DNA of 64,000 nt from Callorhinchus milii (lineage: Eukaryota). The translations under genes were made by a program, and so were the position numbers. The first letter of the stretch is position 1; each line of letters starts with the position of its first letter. The stretch covers positions 744,001-808,000 of the forward strand of contig NW_024704771.1 of NCBI RefSeq assembly GCF_018977255.1, given 5' to 3'. A model generated the notes under the pieces. It was not told where the DNA came from. It was given only the letters and a program-made list of their open reading frames with translations, and did not search any database. Below, piece after piece: positions 1-52,449 of the stretch.

Positions 1-103
1 TCGATGTTTTACACAAAGGCTTCTCTCCCGGTGACGACGCTGAAGATCATCTTATTTATGATTGTAAATGTATACGACAATAATGGTCTGATTCTCCCTC
101 CAG

Positions 104-615
104 TTACAGTCACTCTGGATCCTGACACAGCCCATCGTCAGCTCATCCTGTCTGAGGACCTGACCAGTGTGAGACACGGAGACGAAGAGCAGCCGCTCCC
201 TGACTCCCCGAAGAGGTTTAGTAACTATCCCATTGTCCTGGGATCTGAGGGCTTCACATCGGGGAGACATTACTGGGAGGTGCAGGTGGGCAACAAGAGA
301 GAGTGGATTGTGGGATTGGCCGCAGAGTCTGTCAACAGGAAACAACCAATCACTTGGTCACCACAGGGTGGGGTCTGGGGGGTGTGGCTGAGGGCTGGGG
401 TCTATGATGCTCTGACGTCACCCCCCACCCGCCTGCCCCTGACAGTGAGACCCGGGAAGGTCGGGGTTTACATGGACTATGAGGGGGGACAGGTGTCATT
501 TTACAACGCTCACAACATGGCTCATCTCCACACTTTCACCCAAACTTTCACTGAGAAACTTTATCCTCTGTTCAGTCCCAGGTTTGGTTCTGAGCCTCTG
601 ACAATCTGTCGGTGA
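104..615 (+). CDS. Terminal B30.2 (PRY-SPRY) exon of an upstream butyrophilin-like paralog; rest of gene is left of the window
   Basis: Acceptor ctccctccag at 94-103, phase 1. Reads [11 protein letters not shown]...[14 protein letters not shown]...[16 protein letters not shown]...LYPLFSP, stop TGA 613-615. Flanks are near-identical to those of the gene A B30.2 exon. Confidence 0.9.
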
Positions 616-739
616 CAGTTAATGAGGAGGAAAAATTGTCCATTATAATGAGGAGCAAAAACCCTCAGCCATTAACTTCATACAATGGCGGTGAAAATAT
701 TCTTGGGTGTGGGGGGGAAGGGTGTGCACTTTAAAATGG

Positions 740-1200
740 GCATCACCCCGACCATCACCCTACACACACCCTCACATATACACCCCACCCTCACATCCCA
801 ACACAAACACACGCTCACATTCCGCCTGCACCCCCCCCCCACCCTACCACACCCTCACATCCTCCTCCACACACACCTTCACACCCCGCCCCCACACACA
901 ACCTACCATCCCCCCACCACACACCCTCACATCCCCCCCCACACACCCTCACATCCCCCCCACACACACCCTCACATCCCCACTTCACACACACACTCAC
1001 ATCCCCACATGCACATCACCCTCAGACTCACCCTCACATTTCCCCCCACACACACATCCCCCTCCACACACACACACATCCCCCCACGCACACCCTCAAA
1101 TCCCCCCACACACACCCTCACATCCCCCCTCACACCCTCGCATCCCCCCACACACCCTAACACCCCTCCCCCCCCCCCCCCCCCCCACACACCCCCTCAC
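740..1200. repeat. C/A-rich degenerate minisatellite in the 3' UTR
   Basis: Repeated cacacaccctcacatccccc-like units; shorter counterpart at ~38890-39090. Confidence 0.85.
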
Positions 1201-1597
1201 ATCTGCGTTGAGAGAATCTGACTTGCCATCCAGTGTGTGACTCACACGCTCTGAGACAGGGATATATATCGCTGATATCTTTCTCTCCAGCAATGCCCAG
1301 TCTCACAGTCGGGGCTGTGCTCAGAATCTCACTGAAATCTCCCAAATCACTTTTATATCTATAAACAGGTGCCGTGTTGTTCCCCAGTGAGCAGCCGCGT
1401 CTCACTGTGTATAAATAAGGTGTGTTTTCAGTGACAGTTTTTATAATCTGTCACATTTCTCTCTCACTCACTGTAACAGTCACCCAAGAAGTGAGATCTT
1501 TAACCCTCACTAAACCGAAGTCGTGTCTGTGTCTGTTCAACTGGATATTAATATCCAAAATATTGTCGTTCACTTACAAAATACTCGATAAATTTAC

Positions 1598-1603
1598 AAT
1601 AAA
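1598..1603 (+). terminator. Probable poly(A) signal of the upstream paralog
   Basis: AATAAA followed by a T/GT-rich tract; conserved at 39562-39567 in the duplicate. Confidence 0.5.
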
Positions 1604-1654
1604 TTTGTTTTGTTATTATTTTATGTCCAATGATTGAACACAATCTGCACACAC

Positions 1655-1785
1655 TCCTCACCCCGATAAACACACCCCTAACCCTCACCCCCTGATACCC
1701 ACCCCTAACCCTCACCCCCTGATACACACACCTTAACCCTCACCCCCTGACACACACCCCTAACCCTCACCCCCTGATACCAAGA
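1655..1785. repeat. Telomere-variant-like tandem repeat
   Basis: ~24-26 bp units acaccccctaaccctcaccccctgat containing CCCTAA/CCCTCA; related arrays at 39610-39810 and 45085-45663. Confidence 0.7.
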
Positions 1786-3400
1786 ACAACAAATTACATT
1801 TTCGCAGCGCATTTCACATTAGGACATCTTAAGGGGCTGTGATGTTAGGAATGCCAACCCGAGCTGGTGGTTGGGATCAGGAGGGGTGGAGGGGGGGGAG
1901 GGTAGACGTAAGAGGGTGATCGAAAGAATGGTCAAAGAGGAGTGTCTTGAGATGGGCCTTGAAGGCGGCAACGGAGGGGGCGATGTGGAGGGACTGAGGG
2001 ATGGGGGCAGAGAGGCTGAAGCCCGCTCGCCAATGGTGGGGTGGACAAGATGGGGGACGTGGAGCAGGCCGGAGATGCTGAGCGGGGGGAGAGGACAGGT
2101 TGGTGGGGTTAAGTGGTCACAGTGGTAGAGAGGAGCAAAGCCATGGTGGGCTTTGAAGTTGAGCACCAGGATGTTGAACTGTATTGTCTGAGTGATGGGA
2201 AGCCAGTGGAGCCGGGCGAGGATGGGGGTGATCGGGTCACGGAGCCTGGTTCGGGAGGCTGACAAGGAGGGAGATTCTGCAGTCGAGCCTTGAGATGCCA
2301 AATGTGTGTATGAGGGTTTTGGTGGCCTGACGGGTGAGGTAGTGGTGGAGTCGAGCAATGTTGCAGAGGTGGGGGAAAGGCAGAGCGGGTCATGGTATGT
2401 ATATGGTGGAGAAAAGACAGTTGAGTGTCGAACAAGACACACCGTGTCCTGACTGGGGCTGGAAGTGAAACTGTTAGGAAGACATTTTGGAGATGGTGTG
2501 AGAGATAAGTCCCGAACAATTCAAGCGGAGAACCTTTAATTTTGAGGGGAGCGGAGAGGTGGTGGAGGAGGATGGAGTGGTCCATGGTATTGAAGGCAGC
2601 GGAGAGGTCGAGGAGGACAAGGAGCCAGAGGGAGCCCTGGTCGCAGATGAACAAAATGTCCTTTGTCACCTTGACCAGAGCAGTTTTTGTGCTGATAACA
2701 GCTCAGAAACCCAATTGGAGGGGATCGTGAAGGAAGTGGTAGGAGAGGAATGAACGAAGCTGGGAAGCAATGACTCTTTCAAGGACCTTGGAAAGAAAAG
2801 GGAGGTTGGAGATGGGCCGGTAGTTACAAAGTAGGAATGGGTCCAGGGAAGATTTGTTCAGAATTGGGATGAATCTAGCTGCTTTTAGGAGGATTGGAAC
2901 GGTGCTAAATGATAGGGAGCGATTGATGATGTCGGAGTGCAGAGGAGTGAGGAGGTGGAACTGGGAGGTAAGAAGAAGTATGGGGAATGGGGTCAAGGGA
3001 GCAGGTGGTGTGTTTCATGCTGGTTATGGTGGTGATGAGAGAGGAGGGGGAGACAGGTTCAAAAAGGTGAAGGGAGGTTATGGGTAGGGGTTAGAGTGTG
3101 GGGGGGAGAAGGGGAGGGAGTGGCGGTTGGGAGGGTGGAGGCAACTGAACAGATCTTCTGGATTTTGGACTTGAGGAAATCCAGCATCTCCTCACAGTCA
3201 GAACTTGAGGAGAGAATGGGTGAGGCGTGGGAGGGTGGATGGAGGAATTGGTGTTTGAGAATAGGAGGCTGGGGTCTTCCTTCTCGTCCAAGATTATCTT
3301 GGAGTAGAAGGACCATTTGGTGGAGGCGAGGGTGGAGCGGTACATTTGTGAGAGATGGGAGGGATGGAGGGTGGGCTTGAGGAGGGGTGTGATAACAGCG
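1786..3400 (-). mobile_element. Degraded L2-clade LINE fragment (RT region and 3' end)
   Basis: Minus-strand peptides [30 protein letters not shown] and LHWLPITQTIQFNIL; frameshifted and internally deleted relative to the copy at 39820-41770. Confidence 0.9.
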
Positions 3401-5207
3401 GGTTTCAGGGGGTGGTTGAAATGGCGTCTCCGTGCCTGAAACTGCTGAACCTTCGCCTCACTGGTCACTCACTACCACACGTTCATCCACCCGTGGCCTC
3501 AGTGGTCACTCACCACCACACGTTCATCCACCCGTGGCCTCAGTCGTCACTCACCACCATTCGTTCATCCCCCCGTGGCCGCAGTGGTCTCTCACATCTG
3601 TTGAACAGATGGGAGATTTGAAATTTCTTGCCCCGCCAGTGCCCGCCCACGGACAACCTCGTCCGGCTTTCATCGGCCAAACCTTCGACCCTCCCCACTC
3701 ACATCTTCCGCTGTTTACCGTGGTTTCCCGAGGCCCTGCCATTCACTGACTCATGAGCACGAGCACCATGTGTTGTGACCTTTGGAAGGACTATCTGTGG
3801 TCCCCCTCAGGACTCAGGACTTTCCCCTCCCAGCTCCCCTTAAACAGATGATGGTAATAGATTGGGGGGGCAGTGCGGGGCTGAGCCCCTCTAACTCTCA
3901 TCACCCGCTGTCTAAGCACAACTACAGGTCAAACAAACTTCACTTGTTTTCTCTTATTAATAATAATCAATCCTTGCTTTTCCCTTTGTGAGTGCTTTTA
4001 ATGACTATATTCATTTTAATACCTTTCATCTGTTTATTTAATTAAACAATGAAACATTAGATATGATTATTAATAATGCATTTGATATAGCGCCTGATAA
4101 CGTCTTTGAGACGTCTCAAAGCTCTTCAGAGAATATACTGTAAAGTTGATTGCATATATACTTTCAGCCGCCAATGGCGTACAGCAGTGTCCCACAAACA
4201 GTTGGGTTTCAAATTATTTCATTATTATTGAAATAATTTTGTTTCAATCCTAAACAGCTCAGTTTGTGTATGAAAAATAAAATATTTTAAGCTCCTTAAA
4301 CAATATTAAATTCTAATTTATAATAATAACGAGCTGTGCCCATTACAGCTTTGTTTGCAACCAAAGGATCCAATATGGAATGGAGATTGCAGTGATAGCA
4401 TTGACAAACCGTTTAACATACCACAAGCACTGTGTGTACACTTTAAGCAAAACTGCCACACATGTGCGACGGGTCATAGCTCATGAATGCCATACATGTG
4501 CGAGGGTCATAGCTCATGAACGAAAGAAGATCGTATCCAAGCTATGCCAACCAAAGCACTTTACTGTGTGATCCAACAGGTCTTCGAGTTGTTGCAAGAC
4601 TTCTGTGTTATTTGCAGTCCCCCCCTGAGGGGGACCACAGATAGTCCTTCCAAAGGTCACAACACATGGTGCTCGTGCTCATGAGTCAGTGAATGGCAGG
4701 GCCTCGGGAAACGGGAAACCACGGTAAACAGCGGAAGATGTGAGTGGGGAGGGTCGAAGGTTTGGCCGATGAAAGCCGGGCGAGGTTGTCCGTGGGCGGG
4801 CACTGGCGGGGCAAGAAATTTCAAATCTCCCATCTGTTCAACAGATGTGAGAGACCACTGAGGCCACAGGTGGATGAACGAATGGTGGTGAGTGACGACT
4901 GAGGCCACGGGTGGATGAACGTGTGGTGGTGAGTGACCACTGAGGCCACGGGTGGATGAACGAGTGGTGGAGAGTGACCACTGAGGCCACGGGTGGATGA
5001 ACGAGTGATGGTGAATGACCAGTGAGGCGAAGGTTCAGCAGTTTCAGGCGCGGAGACGCCATTTCAAAATCCCCATCAAACTCATTGCCGGACGTCACTT
5101 CTGAGCTCAATTTTCAAATCCATCCGTGTAAATCCCCCTGAAATCCGCTGTTATCACACCCCTCCTCAAGCCCACCCTCCATCCCTCCCATCTCTCACAA
5201 ATGTACC
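3340..5207. repeat. Inverted duplication: 3340-3810 (+) and 4620-5207 (-), ~810 bp spacer
   Basis: The reverse complement of 4620-4840 matches 3590-3810 almost exactly; both arms carry the ccacccgtggcctcagtggtcactcacc sub-repeats. Confidence 0.9.
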
Positions 5208-6290
5208 ACAATGTACAGGGTTTGAGATCATACCTTTCTGTGTTGAAGTCCAACTCTGCTGTTCTTTGTTCTTCAGTTTCGTTTAATTCGCCTTCTCTCT
5301 TTTCATAGCATTTTTATTTGTCCTTGAAAGGCTTGATCTTCGCTTCCGCATCTTTTAAGATTAAGAAAATTATTGGGAGGACTCCTGTTGGGAGGAATGA
5401 GTGAGAAGACTCAGTGGGAGGAGTCCTTGTTCAGAGGACTCCTGTGGGAGGACTTGTGTTTGGGAGGACTCCTTGTTGGGAGGACTCCTTTTGCCACTTT
5501 ATTGCAGAATATAGAATGGTGTGTGATTTTGTTGCAGAATACTGTGCATACCCCATATTTTGGTGCTTAAGCTCATCAACAATAGGAGATCCCCGAAAAA
5601 AATATGCCCATGACACTCCACTTTTTCCAATGAGGTATAAATCATGTTAATCGGTTATTGTGTTTTTAGCAGACAAACAAACAGACCTTTTTTCTATATT
5701 AGTTCAGATAATAATCCTTACATTTGATTTAGCACTTCATCACAGCTTTGAGGCGTCTCAAAGTGCTTCACAGGATATAATGTAAAGTGAATTGACTGAA
5801 AAATAAAATATTTTAAACTCCCGCAGTAACACTTTATTACAGACAGAGAAATAGATTCACCTTTTCCTCGTTTCTCCTGATGGATGTTGTGGTGTAATTT
5901 GAGGAATAGAATCATTTGCTGAAAGTTACTGTGGTTTAAAATGACAGTGAAGCCACACACAGCGTTAAATACATAAACCTGCAGTACCGCGTTACTGCCA
6001 ACAGATGGTGGTGTTGCACTGGGAAACTTCACCCCAATGTTCACAGTAAAACAACAATAATAATCATAATAATAATATTTGAGAAGTGCCTTTTCATATC
6101 AGGAGAACATCTCAAAGCGCTTCACAGGATTCACTGTAAACATATGAGCTGAGAAGTTACAGGACATAGTTACACAGTGAACCTCACATCAGTATAATTG
6201 CTGACGTCACACCTGAACCCGAGTAAATTCACCTTTTCCTCGTGTCTCCTGATGGATGTTGTGATGCGATTTGAGGAACAGAGTCATTTG
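4340..6290 (-). pseudogene. Remnant exons of an unidentified antisense gene (copy 1)
   Basis: AG/GT-bounded 58-nt exons at 6233-6290 and 5861-5918 (NDSI/VPQI..QHPSGE/DTRK), an acceptor at 5351, and a coding-like tract at ~4340-4600; contains stops. Confidence 0.4.
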
Positions 6291-25260: not shown

Positions 25261-25318
25261 ATGAGCTGCAAACACTGTATTCAGGTCCTGTGGCTTGTGC
25301 TTCCCCTCTCACTGACTG
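25261..25318 (+). CDS. Gene A (butyrophilin-like) signal-peptide exon
   Basis: MSCKHCIQVLWLVLPLSLT, phase-1 donor gtaagg; acceptor at 25231/25232. Confidence 0.8.
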
Positions 25319-25749
25319 GTAAGGAAACACATTGAATCTGTTTGATTTCTGTTGGTGTAAATTGCTGAAGATAAAGGTAAATGATGTGCACAGACTGGTT
25401 GCCGCCTTCCCTCCACAAAATACAGTCAGAGCGCTTTACAGTATATCCTATGAAGATTTTGAGACTTCTCAGCGATGTGATAATCATAGAATAATCAGAA
25501 AATCATAGAGTTATATAGCACAGAAGGAGGCCATTCAGCCCAGTGGGCCAACTCTTTTAAAAGTGCCATCCAAATCAATCCCAATCCCTCGCTCTCTCCC
25601 CATAGCCGCGCAAACTTGTCCATCACAAATAATTATCTATAAGGTGCTATATTAAATGCAAGGATTATTATTATTAACTCAGCGACGGAGTTTGTCTGAG
25701 TCAGTGTGACTGAAAATCCCAACTGTATCCATTGTTTGTTATTAAGCAG

Positions 25750-26097
25750 AGAGATTCATAGTCAGTGGCCCGGCCCTCCCTGTCCCAGCCATTGCTGGTT
25801 CGGATGTTGTCCTGGACTGTAAGTGTTCCACAGACCTGCCACGAGAGAGTGTGGAGGTGAAATGGTTCAGGACAAGATACGACTCCCCTGTGCACTTATA
25901 CAAGGAGGGACGACAGCAACTGGAAACACAGGATGAAGCCTACAGACACAGAACACAACTGTTTGTAGAGGAGTTTATCAACGGCGATGTGTCTCTCAGA
26001 CTGGGAGATGTGCGGGTGTCAGACAACGGACAGTACACATGTTTGGTTAGATACGCCGGATGGCATGAAGAGGCAGAGATAGAGTTGAAAGTTATAG
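25750..26097 (+). CDS. Gene A IgV exon (348 nt)
   Basis: ERFIVSGP..VVLDCKC..EVKWFR..VHLYKEG..AYRHRTQLF..GDVSLRLGDVRVSDNGQYTCLV; AG/GT, phase 1-1. Confidence 0.95.
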
Positions 26098-26258
26098 GTC
26101 AGTAATGATTGCAATTCATTTTACTTCATGTAATCTGTGTGTACAAACATTCATTATTTGTTAATGTTATCTTCAAAATGCAATACTTTATATAAACAAG
26201 AACAAGTTATCATTGATGTAAATGTATTCAGAATGTTGTGGCCTTCAGTAAAGTTACT

Positions 26259-26827
26259 GCTCGCCTCCACTGGCTCCCCATCCCCCAGAGGATTGATCTC
26301 AAGATCCTCATCCTCACCTACAAGGCCATTCACGGCCTTGCTCCCTCCTACCTCTCTGACCTACTATCCCCCTACCTACCTGCCCGTACCCTCCGTTCCT
26401 CCGGCTCCGGTCTGCTCCATGTCCCCCGCCCCAACCGCCCTACCATCGGTGGTCGGGCCTTCAGCCTCTCAGCCCCCAGGCTCAGGAACTCCATCCCCCA
26501 GCGCCTTCGCCGCTTCCTCCCTCTCCTCCTTCAAGGCCGGTCTCAAAACCTTTCTCTTTGACCGAGCCTTCAGCTCCCCTCTCGACTCTCTTCCCCCTCC
26601 TCGCTCCCTCCCTTCCCTCCCCTCCCCTCACCCTGACCATTTCCCCCCTCCTCGCTCCCTCCCTTCCCTCCCCTCACCCTGACCATTTCCCCCCTCCTCG
26701 CTCCCTCCCCTCACCCTGACCATTTCCCCTCTGCTCGGGTCATAACCAAACTGTGCAGCGCCTTGGGAAGTCCTCCTGACGTGAAAGGCGCTTTATAAAT
26801 TAAATCTTGTTGTTGTTGTTGTTGTTG
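26259..26827 (+). mobile_element. Young 5'-truncated L2 copy with a (TTG)n tail
   Basis: Near-identical to 60845-61369; TGCTC at both junctions. Confidence 0.92.
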
Positions 26828-26880
26828 CTCTGTAATGTCCCGGTATTAATATTGTCTGATTCACGTGTCCTGTCTTCCAG

Positions 26881-27156
26881 GCCTTGGCAGTCAGCCTTGG
26901 ATTCACGTTGATGGGCAGCACAGTGATGGTGTGAGTCTGCGGTGTGAATCCAGTGGATGGTTCCCATCACCAGAGGTTCTGTGGTTTGATGATCAGGGAA
27001 ACAACTTAACAACACTCAGTAACTGGACGGTCAGAGAGGATTCCAAAGGTCTCTTCAGTGTTAAAGGACAAATAGAAATAATCTATTCAAACAACAAGAT
27101 CAGGTGTCTGATTCACAATGAAGAAAATGAACAAGAAGGAAAACTCCAAATCTCAG
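26881..27156 (+). CDS. Gene A IgC exon (276 nt)
   Basis: GLGSQPWIHVDG..VSLRCESSGWFPSPEVLW..IRCLIHN..KLQIS; AG/GT, phase 1-1. Confidence 0.95.
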
Positions 27157-27607
27157 GTCAGTAAATACACTGAATTATTAACAATAGTCTGATATATATA
27201 TATGATGCAGATTTGGAGTTCTACAGAATTGGGGCAGAAATATGGAGTTAACCGATTACAGAGATAGGGAGAAGCAGGACCATGGAGGGCTTTGGAGGCA
27301 ATGAATCTTCTTATTACAAACTGAAATGACCGCAGTACTCCAGCTCACCCACCCTTCCTGCTAACCTACTTAAGCTGCTGATTACATTGTGAATGAATCA
27401 ATACTTCATAACTCACAGCCAACATTGCTTCAGAAAAGGCAAATGTTGCTGATCCACCTCACAGTGAAGGGAAGACTCCAAGTTAAGAGCTGAGAAGCTA
27501 CAGGACAACAACAACTGAAATGGGGGCAAATAAAGCTATTTGTGTTTGACATCCAATTTGACATCCATTTGTGTTTGACATCTTCCTCAGTAGCAAAAAC
27601 AGTAGAG

Positions 27608-28372
27608 TGGGTTATCTTTTAGAAGTGGAGAGATTGGAATGTGTTAGTGTCCAGAGGGACTCGGGTGTCCTTGGACACCAGTCACAGAAAGTTAGTCTGC
27701 AGGTGCAGCAGCAATTAGGAAGGGGAACGGTATGTTAGCATTCAGTATGAAAGGATTAGAGTATAAGAGTAGGGAAGTGTTGCTGCCACTGTATAGGGCT
27801 CTGGTGAGACCACACCTGGAATACTGGGGGCAGTTTTGGTCTTCTCATTTAAGGAAGGATGTACTTGCCTCGGAGGGGGTGCAGCGTAGATTTACTGGGT
27901 TAGTACCAGGGATGAAGGGGATGAGTTACGAGGATAGGCTGAACAATTTGGGCCTATATTCTGTGGAATATAGAAGAATTAGAGGGGATCTTATAGAAAC
28001 CTATAATATCAACAAAAGGCAGATAGAGTAGATAGTGGGAGATTGTGTCCCCGGTTGGAGAAACTAAAACCAGGGTCACAACCTTAAAATCAGAGGCAGC
28101 CCTTTCGCACTGAGTTGAGGAAGAACTTCTTCATTCAAAGGGCAGTGAATGTATGGAACTCACTGTCTCAAAGGCCTGTTGACGCTCAGTCCTTGAACAT
28201 ATTCAAGACTGAGATGGATAGATTTCTTCTTGCAAAAGGTATTAAGGGATATGGGGGTAAGGCAGTGTCAGGTTATTAGCTGGAGTTAGATTAGCAGATC
28301 AGCCATGATTGAATGGCGGGGCAGGCTCGAAGGGCCGAATGGCCTCCTCCTGCTCCTACATGTTATGTTATG
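27608..28372 (+). mobile_element. CR1 LINE 3' fragment
   Basis: LYRALVRPHLEYWGQFWSSHLRKDV..VQRRFT..RGDLIETY; ends gggccgaatggcctcctcctgctcct..atgttatg. Confidence 0.92.
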
Positions 28373-28416
28373 ACATCAGAATAGATGTTTAAATGTCTAT
28401 TTACATTCCTTGACAG

Positions 28417-28536
28417 ACGAGTTCTTTCCCAAAGTGCCAGTGGGTTTGGTGGTTTCCGCACTGCTCTTAGGACTTGCCATATTGGTGCTGAGTGTTCTTG
28501 TCCCCTACAGTTTAAAACAGCGCCGAGAGATCAAAG
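28417..28536 (+). CDS. Gene A transmembrane exon (120 nt)
   Basis: DEFFPKVPVGLVVSALLLGLAILVLSVLVPYSLKQRREIK; same length and phase as the gene B TM exon. Confidence 0.9.
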
Positions 28537-28852
28537 GTACGTTCCCATCAGTAACATCTCCCATCACAACACTGTTACTGTTTGTGTAAGAATGTGCAAG
28601 TTCTATAAAATAATTGGTCCCTCCCTTCACTCAGTGACCCCCGGCCTGTTTCATGTCACCGCCTGATCCTCCCTCCCCACCATCAGCAGCTCAGGCTTTC
28701 AGCCTCTCTGCCCCCACTCTCTGCAACTCAAGCCAAGAATCCTTCCGATTCGCCCCCTCCCGCTCCATCACCTCTTTCAAGGCCTGTCCCATGATCTTCC
28801 TCATTCTGCATTTTCAGTTAATTTTACCCTCTCACCCGCTCCCCCCCACCCC

Positions 28853-29063
28853 AACCCCAGCCCAGATCCCAGCTCAGATCCCAGCTCAGACCCCAGCTCA
28901 GACCCCAGCTCAGACTCCAGCTCAGACCCCGGCTCAGACCTCAGTTCAGACCCCAGTTCAGATCCCAGCTCAGACCCCTTCTCAGATCCCAGCTCAGACC
29001 CCAGGTCAGCCCCCAGCTCAGATCCCAGCTCAGACCCCAGCTCAGCCCCCAGCTCAGACCCCA
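28853..29063 (+). repeat. 12-bp tandem repeat expanded inside an L2 3' end
   Basis: Unit cccagctcagac; follows an L2-like RAFSLSAPTL tract. Confidence 0.85.
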
Positions 29064-29269
29064 GTCAGCATTGTGAGGGCTTTGGGATATCCGCCGTTGT
29101 GGAAGGTGCTGTGTAAATGTAAATGTTATTGTAATTCAAACCTCCTGTAATTGTGTTGAGCTGCACTTTGTGTAGTTTCTAACTGTTAATGTTGTAAACA
29201 TATAGACTGAGCATTAAACAATACTGGATTCAGGAGCGGTTTCTAACAGTTTTGTTTTGTATCCTCCAG

Positions 29270-29287
29270 ATCTTGAGAAGAGAGTGG
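29270..29287 (+). CDS. Gene A cytoplasmic microexon (18 nt, DLEKRV)
   Basis: ttttgtatcctccag| ... |gtaagt, phase 1-1. Confidence 0.75.
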
Positions 29288-29364
29288 GTAAGTCATCAAA
29301 ATAAAATAACAATTTCACGTTGTGATTAACCTCATTCACAAGCTTCACACAAAGCAGACATAGT

Positions 29365-30320
29365 TCATAGAATCATAGAATTGAACAGCACAAAAAGAGG
29401 GCATTCGGCCCATAGAGTCTGTGTCGGCTCTTTGAAAAGAGCAATGTAATGTCAGTCCCACTCCCCAGCCCTTTCCCCATAACCTGCAAACCCGTCCTCC
29501 TCAAATACCATCCATCGCGTTTTTAAAAGCTGTTATCGAATCGGCCTCGACTGCCATCTCAGGCAATGCATTCCAGATTCGAACAACTCGCTGCGTGAAA
29601 ACATTTCTTCTCACCTCCCCTCGGCTTCTTTTAGAGACTATTTTAAATCTGTGAACTCGAGTCACCGACACCCACCAGTGGGAACAGTTTTTCCCTTTCT
29701 AACCTATCAAATCCCCTCATGATATTGAAGACCTCTATTAGGTCCTCGTAACCTTCTCTGCTCCAATGAGAATAATCCTAACCTCTCTCGCCTTTCCTCA
29801 TAATCAAGGTCCCTCATTCCTGGTACCATCCTCGTAAATCTCCTCTGCACTCTTTCCAATGCCTGAACATCCTTCCTATAGTGCGGTGCCCAGAACTGGG
29901 CGCAGTATTCTAACTGAGGCCTAACCAGTGTTTATATAGGTTAATCATAACCTTCTGACTCGTGTACTCTATGCCCCTATTTATAAAGCCTAGTATCCCA
30001 TATGCCCTTTTTACAGCCTTATCTCCCTGTCCTGCTACCTTCAAGGATTCATTTACCTGCACCCACAGGTCTATCTGTTCATTTATCCCCTTAAGATTGT
30101 ATGACCAGCCTATATGGCCTCCCCTCATTCTTTCCACCAAAATGCAATACCTCACATTTCTCCACATTAAAATTCATCTGCCATGTGTCGCCCATTTTAC
30201 CATTCTGTCTATGTCTTCCTGCAGTTGGCTCCTATCCTTCTCACTGTTTACCTAACTTTGTGTCGTCCGCAAACTTGGAAATGGTGCTTGCTATATACCC
30301 AAGTCCAGATCACTTATGTT
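29365..30320 (-). mobile_element. CR1 LINE 3' fragment
   Basis: Minus-strand AVKRAYGILGFINRGIEY; catagaatcatagaa..cattcggccc end. Similar short ends at ~13010, 15215, 25485 and 49915. Confidence 0.88.
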
Positions 30321-30924
30321 ATAGTTTGCCAACAAAATACACAGTCACTACACTCTCCAGTAAATCCTGCGAAATGCTTTTGAGGAGCCAAATCTATTTC
30401 AAGGATTATTATTATAGAATAACAACAACTTGCACTTGTATAGTGCCCTCCACGCAGGATGGCACCTCAGATCGCTGAACAGAGACAGAGCCTGATCCTG
30501 AGCCGGGCCGGGCGGGGGTTGGTGGGGGGGTGTTGGTGGGAGCTGACTATAAGCACAGTCGAAAAGAAAGATTTTCAGGTGGGACTTGAAAAGGGGGAGA
30601 GAGGGGACAAGGCGGAGGGTTTGAGGGAGAGTGTTCCAGAGTTTTGGAGCGTAGTGGCTGAACGCACGATTTCCAATGGTGGAGCGGAGGGCAGTAGACA
30701 GGGAAGTAGACAGGTGTATGAGGGATAGAGACTTGAAGGGGTTAATGATAGGGCGGGGCAGCTGTTGTTAACACTTTGCTCTGAGAGCCCATATCGACTC
30801 GATGGTGAATGGCCTCCTTCTGGGCTGTAAATTTCAATGATTCTATTCCATGAATTATTACAGAGTGTTTAACTCCAAACATTGGTCTGTTTCACAGCTT
30901 CAACTTTCCCTTTTCTTCCCTCAG

Positions 30925-30933
30925 ACAACATTG
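30925..30933 (+). CDS. Tentative gene A 9-nt microexon (DNI)
   Basis: Strong acceptor ctttcccttttcttccctcag, donor gtttgt, frame-preserving. Confidence 0.45.
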
Positions 30934-31142
30934 GTTTGTGAACACACACACAGAGGGGGAGAGAGAATGAGTAGCTTCAATGAGGGAGAGAGGGAAGGAG
31001 TGAGAGAGGGAAGGAGTGGGAGAGAGTGAGAGATGGAGGGATTGAGTTAGAGAGAGAATGAGGGAGAGAAAGTGTGAGAGAGGGAGGGAATGTCACGAGG
31101 TGAGGAGCTGCCAAAGGTCTGATCACTTCTTCTTGTTTCCAG

Positions 31143-31169
31143 AGTGGAAAAGGATTCGCAGCTGCGCAG
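31143..31169 (+). CDS. Gene A pre-B30.2 microexon (27 nt, EWKRIRSCA)
   Basis: ttcttcttgtttccag| ... |gtaaga; splices in frame to VTVTLDP. Confidence 0.88.
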
Positions 31170-37100: not shown

Positions 37101-38228
37101 CACGCCCACCCTCACGTCCCCACCATGCGCACCGTCACCTCCCTCCCACATGCACACTCACGACCCCCCCCACGGGCACCCTCCGGACCCTCCCACATGC
37201 ACACTCACATGACCCAACATGCACACTCATGTCCCCCCAGACGCACCCTCACATCTCCCCTACACGCATCCTCACGTCGCTCCCACATACAGTTACTTCC
37301 CTCACACACTACCCTCACGTGCCCCCCACACATGCACCTTGTCTTGACCCCCACACACCAGCACATCCCCCTCACAAACACACTCATCTCAACCCCACAC
37401 ACACCCTCTCGTCCCCCAACACATGCAGCCTCACTTACCCCCACACGCACCCTCGCGTCTCCCCCACACACACCCTCACGTTCACCCCCAAACGCACCTT
37501 TTCGTCATGCCCACACACACCCTCACTTCTCCCACATGCAACCTCACGTCGCCCCACATGCGCAACCTCACGTCCCCCCCCACACGCACCCTCACCTCCA
37601 CCCCGCACCCTCACCTCCGCCCCACACACACCCTCACGACTTCCCAAACACACCCTCAAGTCCCCCCCACACGAACACTCATCTCCAGCTCACACGTACC
37701 CTCATGTCCCACCCACACGCACCCTCATTTACCCCCACATAATTACCTCACAGACCCCCAAAAGACACACCTTCAGCCCCACCCCACACAACCTCACATC
37801 CCACACAACTTCACATCCACCCCACACACAACCTCACTTCCCCTCACACACATACCCTCACATCCCCACCCCCACACACACACCCCCACACACACAACCA
37901 CACATACCCCCACACACACCCCCACTCATGCCCCCACACACACTCACACATACCTCCACACACACCCTCACATGACCACACACACGCACACACCCTCACA
38001 TCTCCCCCCCCCTCACACCCACACATCTCTCCCCCTCACACCCACACATTCCCTCCCACACAAACCCCTCCCCCACAGACACACAGACTCTCAGCCTTTT
38101 TTCTGGATTCTGTTCCCAGGAGACGTCGTTGTTTTACACAAAGGCTTCTCTCCCGGTGACGACGCTGAAGATCATCTTATTTATGATTGTAAATGTGTCC
38201 GACATTAATGGTCTGATTCTCCCTCCAG

Positions 38229-38758
38229 TTACAGTCACTCTGGATCCTGACACAGCCCATCCCCGGCTCATCCTGTCTGAGGACCTGACCAGTGTGAGAC
38301 ACGAAGACGAACTGCAGTCGCTCCCTGACTCCCCGAAGAGGTTTAGTGAAGATCCCATTGTCCTGGGATCTGAGGGCTTCACATCGGGGAGACATTACTG
38401 GGAGGTGCAGGTGGGCAACAAGTCATGGTGGACTGTGGGATTGGCCACAGAGTCTGTCAACAGGAAACAACTAATAACATGGACACCAGAGGATGGGGTC
38501 TGGGGGGTGGGGCTGTGGGGTGGGGACTGTTATGAGGCTCTGACGTCACCTCGTACCCGCCTGACCCTGACAGTGAGACCCGGGAAGGTCGGGGTTTACA
38601 TGGACTATGAGGGGGGACAGGTGTCATTTTACAACGCTGACAACATGGCTCATCTCCACACTTTCACCCAAACTTTCACTGAGAAACTTTATCCTCTGTT
38701 CAGTCCCGGGTATAATATTGATGGGGACAATCCTGAGCCTCTGACAATCTGCCGGTGA
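38229..38758 (+). CDS. Gene A terminal B30.2 exon (530 nt)
   Basis: Acceptor at 38228, TGA 38756-38758. Exon lengths sum to 1386 nt, an open 461-aa leader-IgV-IgC-TM-B30.2 protein. Confidence 0.93.
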
Positions 38759-39819
38759 CAGTTAATGAGGAGGAAAATTAGTCCATTATAATAAGGAGCA
38801 AAAACCCTCAGCCATTAACTTGATTCATTGGCGGTGAAAATATTCTTGGGGGGTGAGGGGGGGAGTGGCCACTTTAAGATGGACATCACCCCGACCATCA
38901 CCCTATACATACCCTCACATTCCACCCGCAACCCCCCCACCCCATCACACCCTCACATTCCCCCACACACACACCCTCACATAACCCCCCCACATACACT
39001 CACATCACCCTCACACACACCCTCACACCCCCCCCACACACACCCGCACATCCCCCCCCACGCACCCTCACATTCCCCCCCCCCCCCCTCACATCTGTGT
39101 TGGGAGAATCTGACTTGCCATCCAGTGTGTGACTCACACGCTCTGAGACAGGGATATATATCGCTGATATCTTTCTCTCCAGCAATGCCCAGTCTCACAG
39201 TCGGGGCTGTGCTCAGAATCTCACTGAAATCTCCCAAATCACTTTTATATCTATAAACAGGTGCCGTGTTGTTCCCCAGTGAGCGGCCGCGTCTCACTGT
39301 GTAGAAACACCGTGTATTTTCAGTGACAGTTTTTATAATCCATAACATTTCTCGTTCACTGTAACAATCACACACCAGCACATCCCCCTCACAAACACAC
39401 TCACCTCACCCCCACACACACCCTCACTTCCCCCCACACGCACCCTCGTAAGAAGTGAGATCTTTAACCCTCACTAAACCGAGGTCCCGTCTGTGTCTGT
39501 TCAACTGGATATTAATATCCAAAGTATTGTTGTTGACTTACAAAATACTCGTTCAATTTACAATAAATTTGTTTTGTTATTATTTTATGTCCAATGATTG
39601 AACCCAATCTGCACACAATCCTCACCCTCTGATACACACACCCCTAACTCTCATCCCCTGATACACACACCCCTAACCCGCACCCCCTGATACACATACC
39701 CTAATCCTAACCCCCTGATACACCCCCCCAACCCTCACCCTCTGATACACACACCCCTAACTATCACCCCCTGATACACACATCCCTAACCCGCACCCCC
39801 TGATACACACCAAGAACAA

Positions 39820-41770
39820 CAAATTATATTTTCGCAGCGCATTTCACGTCAGGACATCTCAAGGGGCTGTGATGTTAGGAATGCCAACCCGAGTTGGTGG
39901 TTGGGATCAGGAGGGGTGGAGGGCAGGGAGGGTAGACGTAAGAAGGTGATCCATGGAATGGTCAAAGAGGAGGGTTTTGAGATGGGCCATGAAGGCGGCA
40001 TCGGAGGGGGCGAGGTGGAGGGACTGAGGGATGGAGTTCAAGAGGATGGGGGCAGAGAGGCTGAAGCACACTCGCCAATGGTGGGGTAGACAAGGTGGGG
40101 GACGTGGAGCAGGCCGGAGCCTGCTGAGCAGGGGGAGAGGACAGGTTGGTGGGGGTTAAGGGGTCACAGTGGTAGAAAGGAGCAAAGCCATGGAGGGCTT
40201 TGAAGTTGAGGACCAGGATGTTGAACTATATCGTCTGAGTGATGGGGAGCCAGTGGAGCCGGGCGAGGATGGGGGTGAACGGGTCACGGAGCCTGGTTGG
40301 GGAGGCTGACAAGGAGGGAGATTCTGCAGTCGAGCCATGAGGTGGCAAATGCGTATATGAGGGTTTCGGTGGCCTGACGGGTGAGGTAGTGGAGGAGTCG
40401 AGCAATGTTGCGGAGGTGGCGAAAAGGCAGAGCGGGTCATGACATGTATATGGGAGAGAAGATATTTGAGTGTCGAACAAGTCACACAGGATCCTGACTG
40501 GTTTGGTGAGGTGGAGTGTGAATCCTTGGATGCTGATGCTGCCAGTGCCTGAGGTGCGGAGGGGCTGGAGTGAGCCAATCAGGAGGGCCGTGGTTTGCTA
40601 ACATTCAGCGGTAGAAAGTTGACTCTCATCCTGGACTTGATGTCTGACAGACAGTCTGTCAGGATGTTAGTTGTCCTGGAATCGATAGTGGAGGCAGAGA
40701 GATAGAGTTGGGTTTCATCTACATACATGAGGAAGTTGACCCCATGTCTGCGCATGATGTCACCGAGGGGGTGTATGCAGTGAATAAAAATGAGGGGAAC
40801 TGAGGAACACCTCACAAGACTGTGGGGCTGGAAGTGAAACTGTTGGGAGAGACAAATTGGAGATGGTGTGAGAGATAAGCCCTGAACCATTCAAGGGGAG
40901 AACCTTGAATTTTGAGGGGAGCGGAGAGGTGGTGGAGGAGGATGGAGTGGTCCATGGTATCGAAGGCAGCCGAGAGATCGAGGAGGACAAGGAGCCAGAG
41001 GGAGCCCTCGTCACAGATGGATAAAATGTCTTTTGCCACCTTGACCAGAGCAGTTTTTGTGCTGCTAACAGCTCGGAAACCCAATTGGAGGGGATCGTGA
41101 AGGGAGTGGTAGGAGAGGAATGAACGAAGCTGGGAAGCAACGACTCTTTCAAGGACCTTAGAAAGAAAAGGGAGGTTGTAGATGGGCTGGTAGTTAGAAA
41201 GCAGGGATGGGTCCAGGGAAGATTTGTTCAAGATGGGGGTGATTCTACCTGTTTTTAGGAGGATTGGAACAGTGGTAAATGATAGGGAGAGATTGATAGT
41301 GTCGGAGTGAAGAGGAGTGAGGTGGTGGAACTGGGAGGAAACAAGAAGTGTGGGGATGGGGTGAAGGGAACAGATGGTGTGTTTCATGCTGGTTATGGTG
41401 GTGTGAAAGAGGAAGGGGAGACAGGTTCAAAAAGGTGAAGGGATGTTATGGGTAGGGGTCAGAGTGTGGGGTGGGGGGAGAAGGGGAGGGAGTGGCAGTT
41501 GGGAGGGTGGAGGCAGCTGAATGATTTTGGACTTGAGGAAATCCAGCATCTCCTCACAGTCAGAACTTGAGGAGAGACTGGACGAGGTGTGGGAGGGTGG
41601 ACGGAGGAGCTGGTTCGTGTTGGAGAATAGGAAGCTTGGGTCTTCCTTCTCATCCAAGATTATCTTGGGAGTAGGAGGACCATTTGGCGGAGGCGAGGGC
41701 AGAGTGGTACTTTTGTGAGAGATCAGAGGGATGGAGGGTGGGTTTGAGGAGGGATGTGATAACAGCGGGC
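39820..41770 (-). mobile_element. L2 fragment (duplicate of 1786-3400)
   Basis: [45 protein letters not shown]. Confidence 0.9.
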
Positions 41771-42609
41771 TTCAGGGGGATTTACACGGATGGATTTGGA
41801 AATCCTGCTTTGGAAATTTGGAAGCTGCCAAACCTTCGCCTCACTGGTCACTCACCACCACTCGTTCATCAACCCGTGGCCTCAGTGGTCTCTTACACCT
41901 GTTGTACAGATGGGAGATTTGAAATTTCTTGCCCCACTGGTGCCCACCCATGGCCAACCTCGCCCGGCTTTCATCGGCCAAACCTTCAACCCTCCCCACT
42001 CACATCTTCCACTGTTTACTGTGGTTTCCCGAGGCCCCACCACTTGCTGACTCATGAGCAAGAGGGGCCCATGTGTTGAGGCCTTTGGGAGGACTGTCTG
42101 TGGTCCTCCTCAGGGCTAAGGACTTTCCCCTCCCAGCTCCCCTTAAACAGGTGATGGTAATAGATGGGGGGGGGGGGGTGTCTGAGCCCCCTCTAGCCCT
42201 CGTCACCCGCTGTCTAAGCACAACTACAGATTAAACAAACTTCACTTGTTTTCTCTTATCAATAATAATAAATTTTTGCTTTTCCCTTTGTGATTGCTTT
42301 TGACAACTATGTTCATTTTAATACCTTTCAGCAGTTTATTTAGTTAAACAATGAAACACTAGATACGATTATTAATAATACATTTGATACAGTGCCTGAT
42401 AACGTCTTCAAGATGTCTCAAAGCACTTCACAAAATATACTGTAAAGTTGACTGCAGTGTCCCACAAACAGTTCGGTTTCAAATTATTTAATTATTATTG
42501 AAATAATTTTGTTTTAATCCTAAACAGCTCGCTTTGTGTATGAAAAATGAAATATTTTAAACTCCTTCAACAATATTAAACTCCAATTTATAATAATAAC
42601 GAGCTGTGC

Positions 42610-49233: not shown

Positions 49234-50265
49234 GTGAGCAACACAGTCATTTTCTGCCTAATCACTTTCACATTAACATTGCTATTTATTACAGAGGCAA
49301 CTAAAAGATTAGCTCACTTGTCAAAGTAGAGAATAGTTTTGTTTCTGATAAAGAATCCACTCACTGTAACTGGAAGCTGGAGCTTGTAATCACTGCAGCT
49401 GAACCTGCCCCAGAAATGTATTGCTTTTATCAACTTCCCTCAGTCTATCAGCCCATAACTGTGGCTGAAAGGTCCTCATCAAACCTGGTATAGACTTCCC
49501 AGCTTCTCCTGATCACCTCCCGTTGTTCAGTGGTGAACAACTGTATCTCATTTGTGAGAGAAAAGACAATTCCTGACTGTGTTAATGAGCTGAACGAGAG
49601 GACATTCTGGCTGTGTTTACTCTGGAGCCGTATTTCAAACTATATTTGCAAAGGTTGTGAGCTGTCCGTGTTCACAGAACTGAACTCCGAGAGTAAATGT
49701 ATCAGGTGAAGCTGAGATGGGAAGATGGGAGGTGAGTATTCTGGGAAGATGAGGTCAAATGGGCTGAAGGACTTTCTTCATCTGAACCTCTCTTGTGATC
49801 GGGTGAAATGTGTCCACTGATGAGGATATAAACTGGTGATATACATTCACCTGTTAAATGATAACATTGCTGCACATTTCCAAATAACATATATTTCTGT
49901 AATAAGACATTTCATAGAATCGTAGAATCGTACAGCACAAAAAGAGGTCATTTGACCCATTGAGTCTGTGCGGCTCTTTGAATCGAGTAATGTAAGGTCA
50001 ATCTCACACCCCAGCCCTTTCCCCATAACCCTGCAAACCTGTCCTCCTCAAATACCTATCCACCGCGTTTTTAAAAGTTGTTTTCGAAGTTTCTGTGCAG
50101 ACTCAGGTCACTTCATATCTCAGACTTTCAGGGCTTCAGAAAACCAGACATTGTAAACCCGTCAGTGACAGTGACACAAATAAACTATTGAATCTCATAG
50201 TTTCACATTTAAATAGAAACAAATCATAATAACAGCTTAATAATTGATACTGTATTGTTCATTAG

Positions 50266-52378: not shown

Positions 52379-52449
52379 GTAATAAATGATTTTAAGTTTC
52401 CCCCAAAATATAATCTTTACTTTCATCCTTTATATAATCCATAACATAG

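What the first reader, a model, noticed from the sequence alone, without database searches (positions are those of the whole stretch)
104..615. Two B30.2 paralogs differ almost only at amino-acid-changing sites clustered in loops
Seen: a manual codon alignment of 104-615 against 38229-38758 gives about 25 amino-acid-changing codons plus two in-frame indels (3 and 15 nt), but only 4 purely synonymous codon differences. Long framework stretches are nucleotide-identical. Changes cluster at [61 protein letters not shown] and [13 protein letters not shown]. Known: B30.2 variable loops are the ligand surface (TRIM5alpha-capsid, TRIM21-Fc, BTN3A1-phosphoantigen). Inference: diversifying selection on an intracellular sensor domain of a fish-lineage butyrophilin, implying different ligands.
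Basis: partly seen in the sequence, partly recalled or inferred. Interest (0 to 1): 0.75.

Follow-up and report, generated by a model that had tools for sequence, protein, structure and literature searches.

The report
Shark butyrophilin sensor domains diversifying rapidly
Two neighbouring butyrophilin-like immune genes of the elephant shark are recent duplicates whose intracellular B30.2 domains have changed amino acids several times faster than neutral DNA, at the positions that form the ligand pocket in human relatives. This is a new example of a well-known kind of arms-race evolution.

Summary
Exon 104-615 and exon 38229-38758 are the last (PRY-SPRY/B30.2) exons of two tandem butyrophilin-like genes of Callorhinchus milii (contig MU249860.1, 744001-808000). 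They differ at 27 amino-acid-changing codons, 4 purely synonymous codons and two in-frame indels (3 and 15 nt).

The whole-domain pairwise dN/dS (1.5-2.6) is not significant on its own (P=0.20). Stronger tests support diversifying selection:
- At 56 columns that are hypervariable in 44 other paralogs, A-B dN is 0.28 against dS 0.03.
- That dN is 8 times the intron divergence (0.036) and 3 times the 3' flank divergence (0.093).
- M2a beats M1a in 13 paralogs (LRT 103) and in the four closest copies (LRT 39-43, all topologies).
- Recombination tests are not significant.
- Four of the six positions equivalent to the BTN3A1 basic ligand pocket differ between the copies.

The identical framework needs no gene conversion between A and B: recent duplication plus purifying selection explains it.

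Across the wider family, B30.2 exons are shared between two butyrophilin types and TRIM genes at 88-93% nucleotide identity, with sharp borders near the exon ends. This suggests exon exchange.

It is a new member of a known kind (TRIM5alpha, finTRIM). The ligands are unknown.

The parts
104..615 (+). Last exon (B30.2 = PRY+SPRY, 169 codons + TGA) of butyrophilin-like gene A. Gene A is XP model P0023, 453 aa; its first six exons lie upstream of the window.
   Evidence: Acceptor ...ccag at 100-103 and an open frame from 106 to the stop at 613-615. Pfam PRY and SPRY. 100% identical to P0023 residues 285-453. Gene A maps to contig MU249860.1 736825-744615 in 7 exons.
38229..38758 (+). Last exon (B30.2, 175 codons + TGA) of butyrophilin-like gene B (P0003/P0004).
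   Evidence: AF2 model pLDDT 81. TM 0.89-0.94 to BTN3 B30.2 and TRIM21 PRYSPRY. phmmer E 4e-50 to human BTN3A1 B30.2.
25261..31168 (+). Exons 1-6 of gene B. Whole-codon ranges: signal 25261-25317, IgV 25746-26099, IgC 26883-27155, TM 28416-28535, and cytoplasmic mini-exons 29269-29286 and 31142-31168.
   Evidence: Exact mapping of P0004 onto L008, which equals window 22261 onward. Pfam V-set and butyrophilin Ig-C (C2-set_3).
1..6065 (+). Segmental duplicate of 38126-43760: the end of intron 6, the B30.2 exon and about 5.4 kb of 3' flank. It serves as a neutral yardstick.
   Evidence: Self-BLAST. Substitution divergence in 616-6000 is 408/4398 = 0.093.
38126..43760 (+). Partner copy of the duplicated segment around gene B's B30.2 exon.
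136..141 (+). Variable cluster RQ (A) / PR (B), just before the strand at B residues 13-15.
   Evidence: Column 12 has posterior(omega>1) 0.97.
223..228 (+). Variable cluster NY (A) / ED (B). It aligns with BTN3A1 W350/H351 in the phosphoantigen pocket.
   Evidence: Alignment to BTN3A1. Pocket residues from PMC4303140. Posteriors 1.00 and 0.95.
298..309 (+). Variable cluster REWI (A) / SWWT (B). The I/T position aligns with BTN3A1 H378.
   Evidence: posteriors 1.00 and 0.998.
346..408 (+). Variable region PITWSPQG...WLRAG-VYD (A) / LITWTPED...GLWGGDCYE (B), including the 3-nt indel. D/E aligns with BTN3A1 R412.
580..591 (+). C-terminal loop RFGS (A) / GYNIDGDNP (B), with a 15-nt length difference. 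It lies just after the BTN3A1 R469 equivalent.
   Evidence: The short form is shared by A, L1 and L2; the long form by B and all TRIM-type exons.
50244..52386 (+). First exons of a third, different butyrophilin-like gene (gene C, type 2): IgV within 50244-50843, IgC within 51189-51530, TM within 52189-52386. Its B30.2 exon lies beyond the window end.
   Evidence: Pfam V-set and C2-set_3. The IgV is 35% identical to gene B's IgV. It is collinear with paralogous unit L001, whose B30.2 is P0012.

Best explanation
The window holds part of a tandem array of at least four butyrophilin-like genes of the elephant shark. Each encodes signal peptide, IgV, IgC, a transmembrane segment, a short cytoplasmic linker and a B30.2 domain.

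Shown:
- Genes A and B are young duplicates, with intron divergence of 3.6%.
- Since duplication, their intracellular B30.2 domains have fixed amino-acid replacements far faster than neutral DNA changes.
- The replacements are confined to about 55 hypervariable positions, while the beta-sandwich framework stays under purifying selection (omega 0.3-0.5).
- These positions vary in more than 50 paralogous B30.2 domains of the same genome.
- They include the equivalents of the residues that line the ligand pocket of human BTN3A1.

Inferred:
- This is positive diversifying selection on binding specificity.
- Each copy senses a different cytosolic ligand, probably pathogen-derived or a variable self molecule, and reports it through the Ig ectodomain, as BTN3A1 does for phosphoantigens.
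- Some variants are new point substitutions and some are states reused from the family pool.
For: Identity and architecture:
- Pfam PRY+SPRY, V-set and BTN Ig-C.
- 100% matches to C. milii 'butyrophilin subfamily 1 member A1-like' models.
- Seven-exon maps for both genes.
- Fold TM 0.89-0.94 to BTN3 and TRIM21 B30.2.

Rates between A and B:
- HV columns were defined from 44 other paralogs.
- HV columns: dN 0.276, dS 0.026. Framework: dN 0.019, dS 0.062.
- HV non-synonymous differences are 27/117. Against the 3' flank (408/4398) P=1e-5. Against introns 1-5 (157/4414) P=4e-14.
- Whole-domain non-synonymous differences (32/384) against introns: P=3e-5.
- Exons 1-6: dN only 0.026.

Likelihood tests:
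- My GY94 code reproduces IQ-TREE's M0 lnL of -3059.92.
- M2a vs M1a LRT is 103 for 13 exons, with 18% of sites at omega 4.2.
- LRT is 39-43 for A, B, L1, L2 under all three topologies, with about 17% of sites at omega about 10.
- LRT is 50, 30 and 19 in three partitions with their own trees.
- The partition model with its own synonymous rate gives omega(HV) 4.8-6.1 (P<=7e-5), with dS(HV) equal to dS(framework) in the young subgroup.
- Lineage-unique derived states: 19 non-synonymous to 1 synonymous (P=0.03).

Location of the changes:
- A/B differences fall on family-hypervariable columns (P=1.5e-10).
- Only 5 of 27 lie in predicted strands, against 37% of the domain (P=0.03).
- 4 of 6 BTN3A1 basic-pocket equivalents differ (P=0.006), and 3 of 6 are selected sites.

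No recombination signal:
- PHI P=0.13-0.25.
- GENECONV-like A-B P=0.34.
- In the A/B/L1 triplet, unique changes are interspersed.
Against: - Whole-domain pairwise dN/dS is not significantly above 1 (P=0.20).
- In 17 of 37 differing columns both states also occur in other paralogs. Part of the difference could therefore be imported by short conversion tracts that PHI cannot see.
- Across all 13 exons the synonymous rate is 2.2 times higher in HV columns, and omega(HV) falls to 1.45 (P=0.01) once this is allowed for. The family-wide M2a estimate is therefore inflated.
- Several differences are multi-nucleotide (AGA GAG / TCA TGG; GTC / TGT), which single-step codon models can over-read.
- The neutral yardsticks disagree with each other: introns 0.036, 3' flank 0.093.
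- The site models are my own implementation, with NEB rather than BEB posteriors.
- HV columns come from paralogs of the same family, so they are not fully independent.
- 3D clustering was not measured because no coordinates were available.
- There is no evidence on expression, on ligands, or on signalling through the ectodomain.
Confidence: 0.72

Rival explanations
1. Mosaic gene conversion. The clustered A/B differences were pasted in as short tracts from other B30.2 exons (butyrophilin or TRIM) of the 4-Mb cluster. On this view the pair records shuffling of an old variant pool, not new adaptive substitutions in A or B.
For: - In 17 of 37 differing columns both states occur in other paralogs. 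For example, B shares GAA GAT and GGG TAT AAT with TRIM exon L4c, and A shares AAC TAT with L3a/L3b.
- Exon A nt 7-474 is 92.5-92.9% identical to TRIM exons with no flank similarity.
- Homoplasy is high at all distances.
- The exon tree is poorly resolved.
- Family-wide dS is 2.2 times higher in HV columns.
- Gene conversion among B30.2 exons has been reported for zebrafish NLR-B30.2 genes.
Against: - PHI is not significant (P 0.13-0.25).
- No pair involving A or B passes correction in the GENECONV-like test; A-B gives P=0.34.
- 20 columns carry states unique to A or to B, at 19 non-synonymous to 1 synonymous.
- dS in HV columns is not raised between A and B (0.026) or within the young subgroup, whereas imported tracts should carry synonymous differences too.
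- Even if true, the pool itself has omega>1, so selection is still needed.
Confidence: 0.15
2. Relaxed constraint. The loops are simply free to drift after duplication (or one copy is decaying), with no positive selection.
For: - Whole-domain omega is near 1-2 and not significantly above 1.
- Exons 1-6 also have a high omega (0.79), on few changes.
- Copy A carries unique replacements at otherwise conserved positions: T74A, E88Q and D138H in 13-exon alignment columns (A73, Q87 and H136 in copy A's own numbering).
Against: - Drift cannot exceed the neutral rate, yet HV dN (0.276) is 3-8 times the flank and intron divergence (P 1e-5 to 4e-14).
- M2a is strongly preferred to M1a, which already contains a neutral class.
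- omega(HV)=1 is rejected.
- Both genes keep all seven exons open.
Confidence: 0.05
3. A mutational artefact. Clustered multi-nucleotide mutations or a local hypermutation process hit these codons and mimic selection.
For: - Several adjacent multi-base changes.
- Transversions are enriched in the exon relative to the flank: 18:22 against 257:151 (P=0.04).
Against: - Synonymous sites inside the same HV codons are not elevated in the young subgroup.
- The changes recur at the same structural positions in more than 50 paralogs, with a fixed framework.
Confidence: 0.05
4. An assembly artefact: collapsed or chimeric paralogs in a repeat-rich region produce a false pair.
For: The region is rich in minisatellites and low-complexity DNA.
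Against: - The window is identical to the public contig over the stretches compared.
- Both exons sit in long collinear flanks.
- Both match independent full-length gene models.
Confidence: 0.02

Closest known systems
Teleost finTRIM (ftr) B30.2 domains (van der Aa et al. 2009, PMC2657112)
   Same: A lineage-specific multigene expansion. The B30.2 is encoded by one exon, with a conserved framework and hypervariable positions. M1a/M2a detects positively selected sites concentrated in the TRIM21-type variable loops.
   Different: Here the domain is attached to an IgV-IgC-TM butyrophilin body, not RING-B-box-coiled coil. The host is a holocephalan, and that paper found no finTRIM counterpart in the elephant shark draft.
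Primate TRIM5alpha B30.2 (capsid recognition)
   Same: Positive selection on patches of the B30.2 variable regions, including length changes in loops. Basis: established knowledge, as cited in PMC2657112.
   Different: TRIM5alpha evolves between orthologues of different species, and its ligand is known. Here the divergence is between tandem paralogues in one genome, and the ligand is unknown.
Human BTN3A1 B30.2 (phosphoantigen sensor)
   Same: The same architecture and fold: E 4e-50, 47-48% identity, TM about 0.9. The variable positions of A and B coincide with 4 of the 6 basic pocket residues.
   Different: The basic pocket is not conserved. The equivalents are Y/D, I/T, T, D/E, P/R and S in place of H351, H378, K393, R412, R418 and R469. 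Pyrophosphate binding is therefore not expected.
Zebrafish NLR-B30.2 family (Howe et al., 10.1101/022061)
   Same: B30.2 exons are exchanged or homogenised between gene groups that differ elsewhere, and the domain stays variable in amino acids.
   Different: The partner domains here are Ig ectodomains and TRIM modules, not NACHT-LRR.

Membership tests
B30.2 (PRY-SPRY) domain | A PRY motif followed by a SPRY domain, both above Pfam gathering scores | tested here: met
   Copy A: PRY 87.5 bits (cut-off 27.5) and SPRY 79.7 bits (cut-off 26.3). Copy B: 83.5 and 92.7 bits.
B30.2 (PRY-SPRY) domain | Distorted beta-sandwich fold | tested here: met
   AF2 model of B has pLDDT 81 and 12 strands. Foldseek TM 0.89-0.94 and rmsd 1.5-2.2 A to BTN3 and TRIM21 B30.2.
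Butyrophilin / butyrophilin-like | Type I membrane protein: signal peptide, IgV, IgC, TM, then a cytoplasmic B30.2 encoded by one terminal exon | tested here: met
   Gene B exons were mapped in the window. V-set E 5e-12 and BTN Ig-C (PF22705) E 2e-22. A hydrophobic TM exon is present. There are seven exons in both A and B.
Butyrophilin / butyrophilin-like | One-to-one orthology with a named mammalian BTN (BTN1A1, BTN3A1) | tested here: inconclusive
   The best hits outside C. milii are at most 61% identical in the B30.2 and come from mixed BTN and TRIM proteins. No gene tree of the ectodomains was built. The name 'BTN1A1-like' is an automatic label.
BTN3A1-type phosphoantigen sensor | Basic pocket H351, H378, K393, R412, R418, R469 | tested here: not met
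   The equivalents in A/B are Y/D, I/T, T/T, D/E, P/R and S/S.
Diversifying-selection B30.2 families (TRIM5alpha, finTRIM type) | A class of codons with omega>1 supported by a likelihood-ratio test | tested here: met
   M2a vs M1a LRT is 103 (13 exons), 39-43 (4 closest) and 99 summed over partitions. Partition omega(HV) is 4.8-6.1.
Diversifying-selection B30.2 families (TRIM5alpha, finTRIM type) | Selected sites lie in the variable loops or on the ligand-binding face | tested here: inconclusive
   Enrichment outside strands is modest (P=0.03) and at BTN3A1 pocket equivalents is clearer (P=0.006-0.02). No 3D distances could be computed.
Diversifying-selection B30.2 families (TRIM5alpha, finTRIM type) | Lineage-specific multigene expansion | tested here: met
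   At least 56 distinct C. milii B30.2 domains at 70-87% identity. There are at least 4 tandem BTN-like genes at contig 0.74-0.86 Mb.
Diversifying-selection B30.2 families (TRIM5alpha, finTRIM type) | Binding of a pathogen or other variable ligand | not testable with these tools
   There are no functional data.
TRIM (RING-B-box-coiled coil) | N-terminal RING and B-box | tested here: not met
   Genes A and B have Ig domains instead. Only the B30.2 exon is shared with TRIM genes.

The most novel reading that the evidence does not exclude
The elephant shark keeps one common, exchangeable pool of hypervariable B30.2 exons. The pool is plugged into at least three gene bodies: two butyrophilin types whose IgV domains are only 35% identical, and RING-B-box TRIM genes. 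The same evolving cytosolic recognition module would then be coupled either to a cell-surface Ig display (inside-out signalling to lymphocytes) or to an E3 ligase (direct restriction). Exon-limited gene conversion homogenises the framework, while selection keeps the pocket positions diverse.

Evidence so far:
- Exon A nt 7-474 is 92.5-92.9% identical to two TRIM exons (88-90% to the others), with sharp borders near the exon ends and no flank similarity.
- The B30.2 exon and adjacent intron of the type-2 gene are 97-99% identical to those of A and B, although the ectodomains are 35% identical.
- Family-wide dS is 2.2 times lower in the framework than in HV columns.
Probability: 0.3. Interest if true: 0.7.

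Novelty: new member of a known kind. Interest (0 to 1): 0.5.

Why it matters
Butyrophilins are known mainly from mammals. There one member (BTN3A1) uses its B30.2 pocket to sense phosphoantigens and alert gamma-delta T cells.

A tandem array in a chimaera has B30.2 pockets that diversify under positive selection. This suggests that intracellular sensing by butyrophilins is old and was once, or still is in this lineage, a multi-specificity system rather than a single-ligand one.

It also gives a compact natural set of near-identical domains that differ only at pocket positions. Such a set is useful for working out what B30.2 pockets can recognise. The sharing of the exon with TRIM genes bears on how vertebrate innate sensors exchange recognition modules.

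The phenomenon itself, positive selection on B30.2 loops, is already textbook for TRIM5alpha and finTRIM.

Tried and rejected
- **Whole-domain pairwise dN/dS as a test:** not significant (P=0.20), so it cannot carry the claim.
- **3' flank alone as the neutral yardstick:** it is 2.6 times more diverged than introns 1-5. Both are reported. Intron 6 (0.19) was discarded because minisatellites make it misalign.
- **Loop versus strand enrichment:** only modest, because 63% of the model is non-strand.
- **Gene conversion of the framework between A and B:** rejected. dS(framework) is 0.062, no lower than the intron or flank divergence; the GENECONV-like test gives P=0.34; the longest identical run gives P=0.075.
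- **A recombination breakpoint among A, B and L1:** suggested by the short flanks but not borne out by the triplet pattern.
- **Family-wide NG86 at HV columns:** gives omega 1.07 with raised dS. This showed that the 13-exon M2a estimate is inflated, and led to the partition model.
- **BTN3A1-like phosphoantigen binding:** rejected, because the pocket is not basic.
- **Literature:** searches found no paper on elephant-shark butyrophilin B30.2 evolution. The library is incomplete, so this is not proof of absence.
- **Assembly gap:** the single N at 8080 was left as it is.

Full report
**What is there**

The window is Callorhinchus milii (elephant shark, a chimaera), contig MU249860.1 positions 744001-808000. 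Locus L008 fetched from that contig matches the window from 22261 onward.

Coordinates 104-615 and 38229-38758 are single open exons behind AG acceptors, ending in TGA. Both score as PRY plus SPRY well above Pfam cut-offs. They are 100% identical to the C-termini of two NCBI models named 'butyrophilin subfamily 1 member A1-like': P0023 (gene A, 453 aa) and P0003/P0004 (gene B, 459 aa).

Both genes have seven exons: signal, IgV, IgC, TM, two mini-exons and B30.2. Gene B lies wholly in the window (25261-38758). Only the last exon of gene A is in it.

An AlphaFold model of copy B (pLDDT 81) superposes on BTN3 and TRIM21 B30.2 structures with TM 0.89-0.94. By sequence the best solved relative is human BTN3A1 B30.2 (E 4e-50).

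**Checking the observation**

A protein-guided codon alignment gives 169 aligned codons: 138 identical, 27 amino-acid-changing and 4 purely synonymous. There is one 3-nt and one 15-nt indel.

The changes are clustered: 21 of 27 have a neighbour within two codons, against 13.2 expected (P=0.006).

The count '25 versus 4' overstates the case. Multi-hit codons contain synonymous steps, and Nei-Gojobori gives Sd 7, Nd 33, dN 0.091, dS 0.059 and omega 1.5 (ML 2.6). Fisher P=0.20. The whole-domain pairwise ratio therefore does not reject neutrality.

**Neutral yardsticks**

The exon sits in a segmental duplication, 1-6065 against 38126-43760. Its 3' flank differs by 408/4398 = 0.093.

After fetching gene A's upstream part (L007), introns 1-5 of A and B differ by 157/4414 = 0.036. 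Exons 1-6 have dS 0.033 and dN 0.026. The B30.2 exon has dS about 0.05.

The pair is therefore a young duplicate. With framework dS 0.062 and omega 0.30, long identical stretches are expected without any special mechanism. The longest identical run (74 nt) is not unusual (P=0.075), and a GENECONV-like permutation test for A-B gives P=0.34.

**The family**

A search with gene B returned more than 5000 B30.2 proteins. The top of the list is almost entirely C. milii.

There are 56 distinct domains at 70-87% identity. They come from butyrophilin-like and from TRIM ('zinc-binding protein A33-like', 'nuclear factor 7') genes, many on the same 4.1-Mb contig. They share a nearly invariant framework and vary at the same positions where A and B differ.

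I fetched DNA for eleven more exons (L001-L006) and codon-aligned 13 exons. A, B, L1 (P0012) and L2 (P0059) form a butyrophilin subgroup with a common intron end. Pairwise omega within it is 1.3-2.5, against 0.45-1.0 in the rest of the family.

**Tests of selection**

1. *Site models.* My GY94 implementation reproduces IQ-TREE's M0 likelihood (-3059.92).
   - For 13 exons, M2a beats M1a by LRT 103, with 18% of sites at omega 4.2. Of the 19 sites with posterior above 0.9, 14 are A/B differences.
   - For the four closest exons the LRT is 39-43 under all three topologies, with about 17% of sites at omega about 10.
   - For three partitions with their own trees the LRTs are 50, 30 and 19.

2. *Columns defined in advance.* Hypervariable (HV) columns were defined from 44 paralogs not used in the DNA set (entropy >= 0.8; 56 columns).
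   - A/B differences fall on them (Mann-Whitney P=1.5e-10).
   - In HV columns, A-B dN is 0.276 and dS is 0.026. In the framework, dN is 0.019 and dS is 0.062.
   - HV non-synonymous change (27/117) exceeds the flank (P=1e-5) and the introns (P=4e-14).
   - The whole-domain non-synonymous rate also exceeds the introns (P=3e-5).

3. *Synonymous-rate check.*
   - Across all 13 exons, NG86 dS is higher in HV columns (0.39 against 0.14).
   - A partition model with separate rates gives omega(HV) 1.45 (P=0.01), with a 2.2-fold higher synonymous rate in HV columns. The family-wide M2a value is therefore inflated.
   - In the young subgroup dS(HV) equals dS(framework) (0.10-0.13), and omega(HV) is 4.8-6.1 (P<=7e-5). 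The case is strongest exactly where the finding lies.

4. *Polarised changes.* Nine columns carry states unique to A and eleven carry states unique to B among 13 exons. These are 19 non-synonymous and 1 synonymous (P=0.03).

**Recombination**

- PHI is not significant (P 0.13-0.25).
- In the A/B/L1 triplet, the unique changes of each copy (16, 17 and 11) are interspersed along the exon.
- However, in 17 of 37 differing columns both states also occur in other paralogs, and the exon tree is poorly resolved.

Reuse of family variants, by short conversion tracts or by convergence, probably contributes. It does not remove the need for selection, because the pool itself has omega above 1.

**Where the changes lie**

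- Only 5 of 27 changes are in predicted strands, which make up 37% of the domain (P=0.03).
- Aligning to BTN3A1 with one numbering offset puts all six published basic pocket residues (H351, H378, K393, R412, R418, R469; PMC4303140) on the right residue types. Their equivalents in copy B are residues 41, 68, 83, 102, 108 and 158.
- Four of the six differ between A and B (Y/D, I/T, D/E, P/R; P=0.006), and three are selected sites (P=0.02).
- None of the copies keeps the basic pocket, so a phosphoantigen-like ligand is not expected.
- I could not compute 3D clustering because model coordinates are not exposed.

**Context worth noting**

The array has at least four genes: A, B, C (window 50244 onward) and D (L001).

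C and D are a second butyrophilin type. Their IgV is 35% identical to B's. Yet D's B30.2 exon and the 105 nt of intron before it are 97-99% identical to those of A and B. P0012 is the TM-to-B30.2 half of D.

Exon A nt 7-474 is 92.5-92.9% identical to TRIM B30.2 exons 3.3 Mb away. That is closer than A is to B (89.8%), and there is no similarity in the introns or 3' flanks.

Together with the lower framework dS family-wide, this points to exchange or homogenisation of the B30.2 exon across gene architectures. The same has been proposed for zebrafish NLR-B30.2 genes (10.1101/022061).

**Comparison and novelty**

The pattern matches teleost finTRIMs and primate TRIM5alpha: one-exon B30.2, fixed framework, positively selected variable loops and lineage-specific expansion (PMC2657112).

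The new elements are the carrier (an IgV-IgC-TM butyrophilin), the lineage (a holocephalan) and the shared exon pool with TRIM genes.

I found no paper describing this in the searchable library. That is not proof of absence.

**Verdict**

It is a new member of a known kind, of moderate interest.

Noticed in passing
window 106-579 vs L003:12334-12801 and L003:18143-18610: The butyrophilin B30.2 exon is 92.5-92.9% identical in nucleotides to B30.2 exons of RING-B-box TRIM genes 3.3 Mb away on the same contig. That is closer than copy A is to copy B (89.8%). Similarity starts at codon 3 and stops before the C-terminal loop, and there is no intron or 3' flank similarity. This suggests exon-limited exchange or conversion between gene architectures.
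   Followed up: partly
window 50244-52386 (gene C) and L001:1424-4112 plus 10001-32877 (gene D): There is a second butyrophilin-like type in the same tandem array. Its IgV is 35% and its IgC 30% identical to gene B's, and it has a longer coiled-coil linker. Yet it carries a B30.2 exon and adjacent intron 97-99% identical to those of A and B. NCBI splits gene D into a 229-aa Ig protein and a 307-aa 'nuclear factor 7, ovary-like' protein (P0012), which is probably one gene.
   Followed up: partly
window 163-167 alignment columns; nt 586 in A, 38711-38725 in B: The 15-nt length difference is a deletion shared by A, L1 and L2. B keeps the long form found in all TRIM-type exons. B groups with the deleted copies by its flanks, so either B is basal in the subgroup or its C-terminal loop was re-acquired.
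   Followed up: partly
introns 1-5 of genes A/B (L007, L008) vs window 616-6000 / 38759-43760: Neutral divergence between the two units is uneven: 3.6% in introns 1-5, about 5% at synonymous sites of the B30.2 exon, and 9.3% in the 3' flank. Either the 5' part was homogenised later or the 3' flank mutates faster.
   Followed up: no
window 33038-37985 (also 700-1200, 31227-32119, 38900-39100, 45116-45574): Large C-rich minisatellites (23-nt unit CCCCCCACACGCACCCTCACGTC and variants) fill most of intron 6 of gene B. They recur just after each B30.2 exon. GC skew reaches -0.79.
   Followed up: no
window 20044-24462: A 28-nt minisatellite (CCAGACAGCAATGTGAGGAGTGACCGGG) of about 159 copies lies between genes A and B.
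   Followed up: no
window 57792-60467 (+): An 892-codon open frame with endonuclease (Exo_endo_phos) and reverse transcriptase domains. It is a LINE element inside an intron of gene C, preceded by a 25-nt tandem repeat at 57418-57783.
   Followed up: partly
window 6598-7955 (-): A remnant of a pogo/Tc5-type DNA transposon (DDE_1 endonuclease and HTH_Tnp_Tc5), broken into several frames.
   Followed up: partly
window 322-324, 364-366, 511-513 (copy A): Copy A carries replacements unique among the 13 exons at positions otherwise conserved: A73 (others T or R), Q87 (others mostly E), and H136 in the YNADNM motif (D in all 56 paralogs seen). This could be specialisation or slight relaxation of A.
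   Followed up: no
window 8080: A single N. It was left untouched.
   Followed up: no
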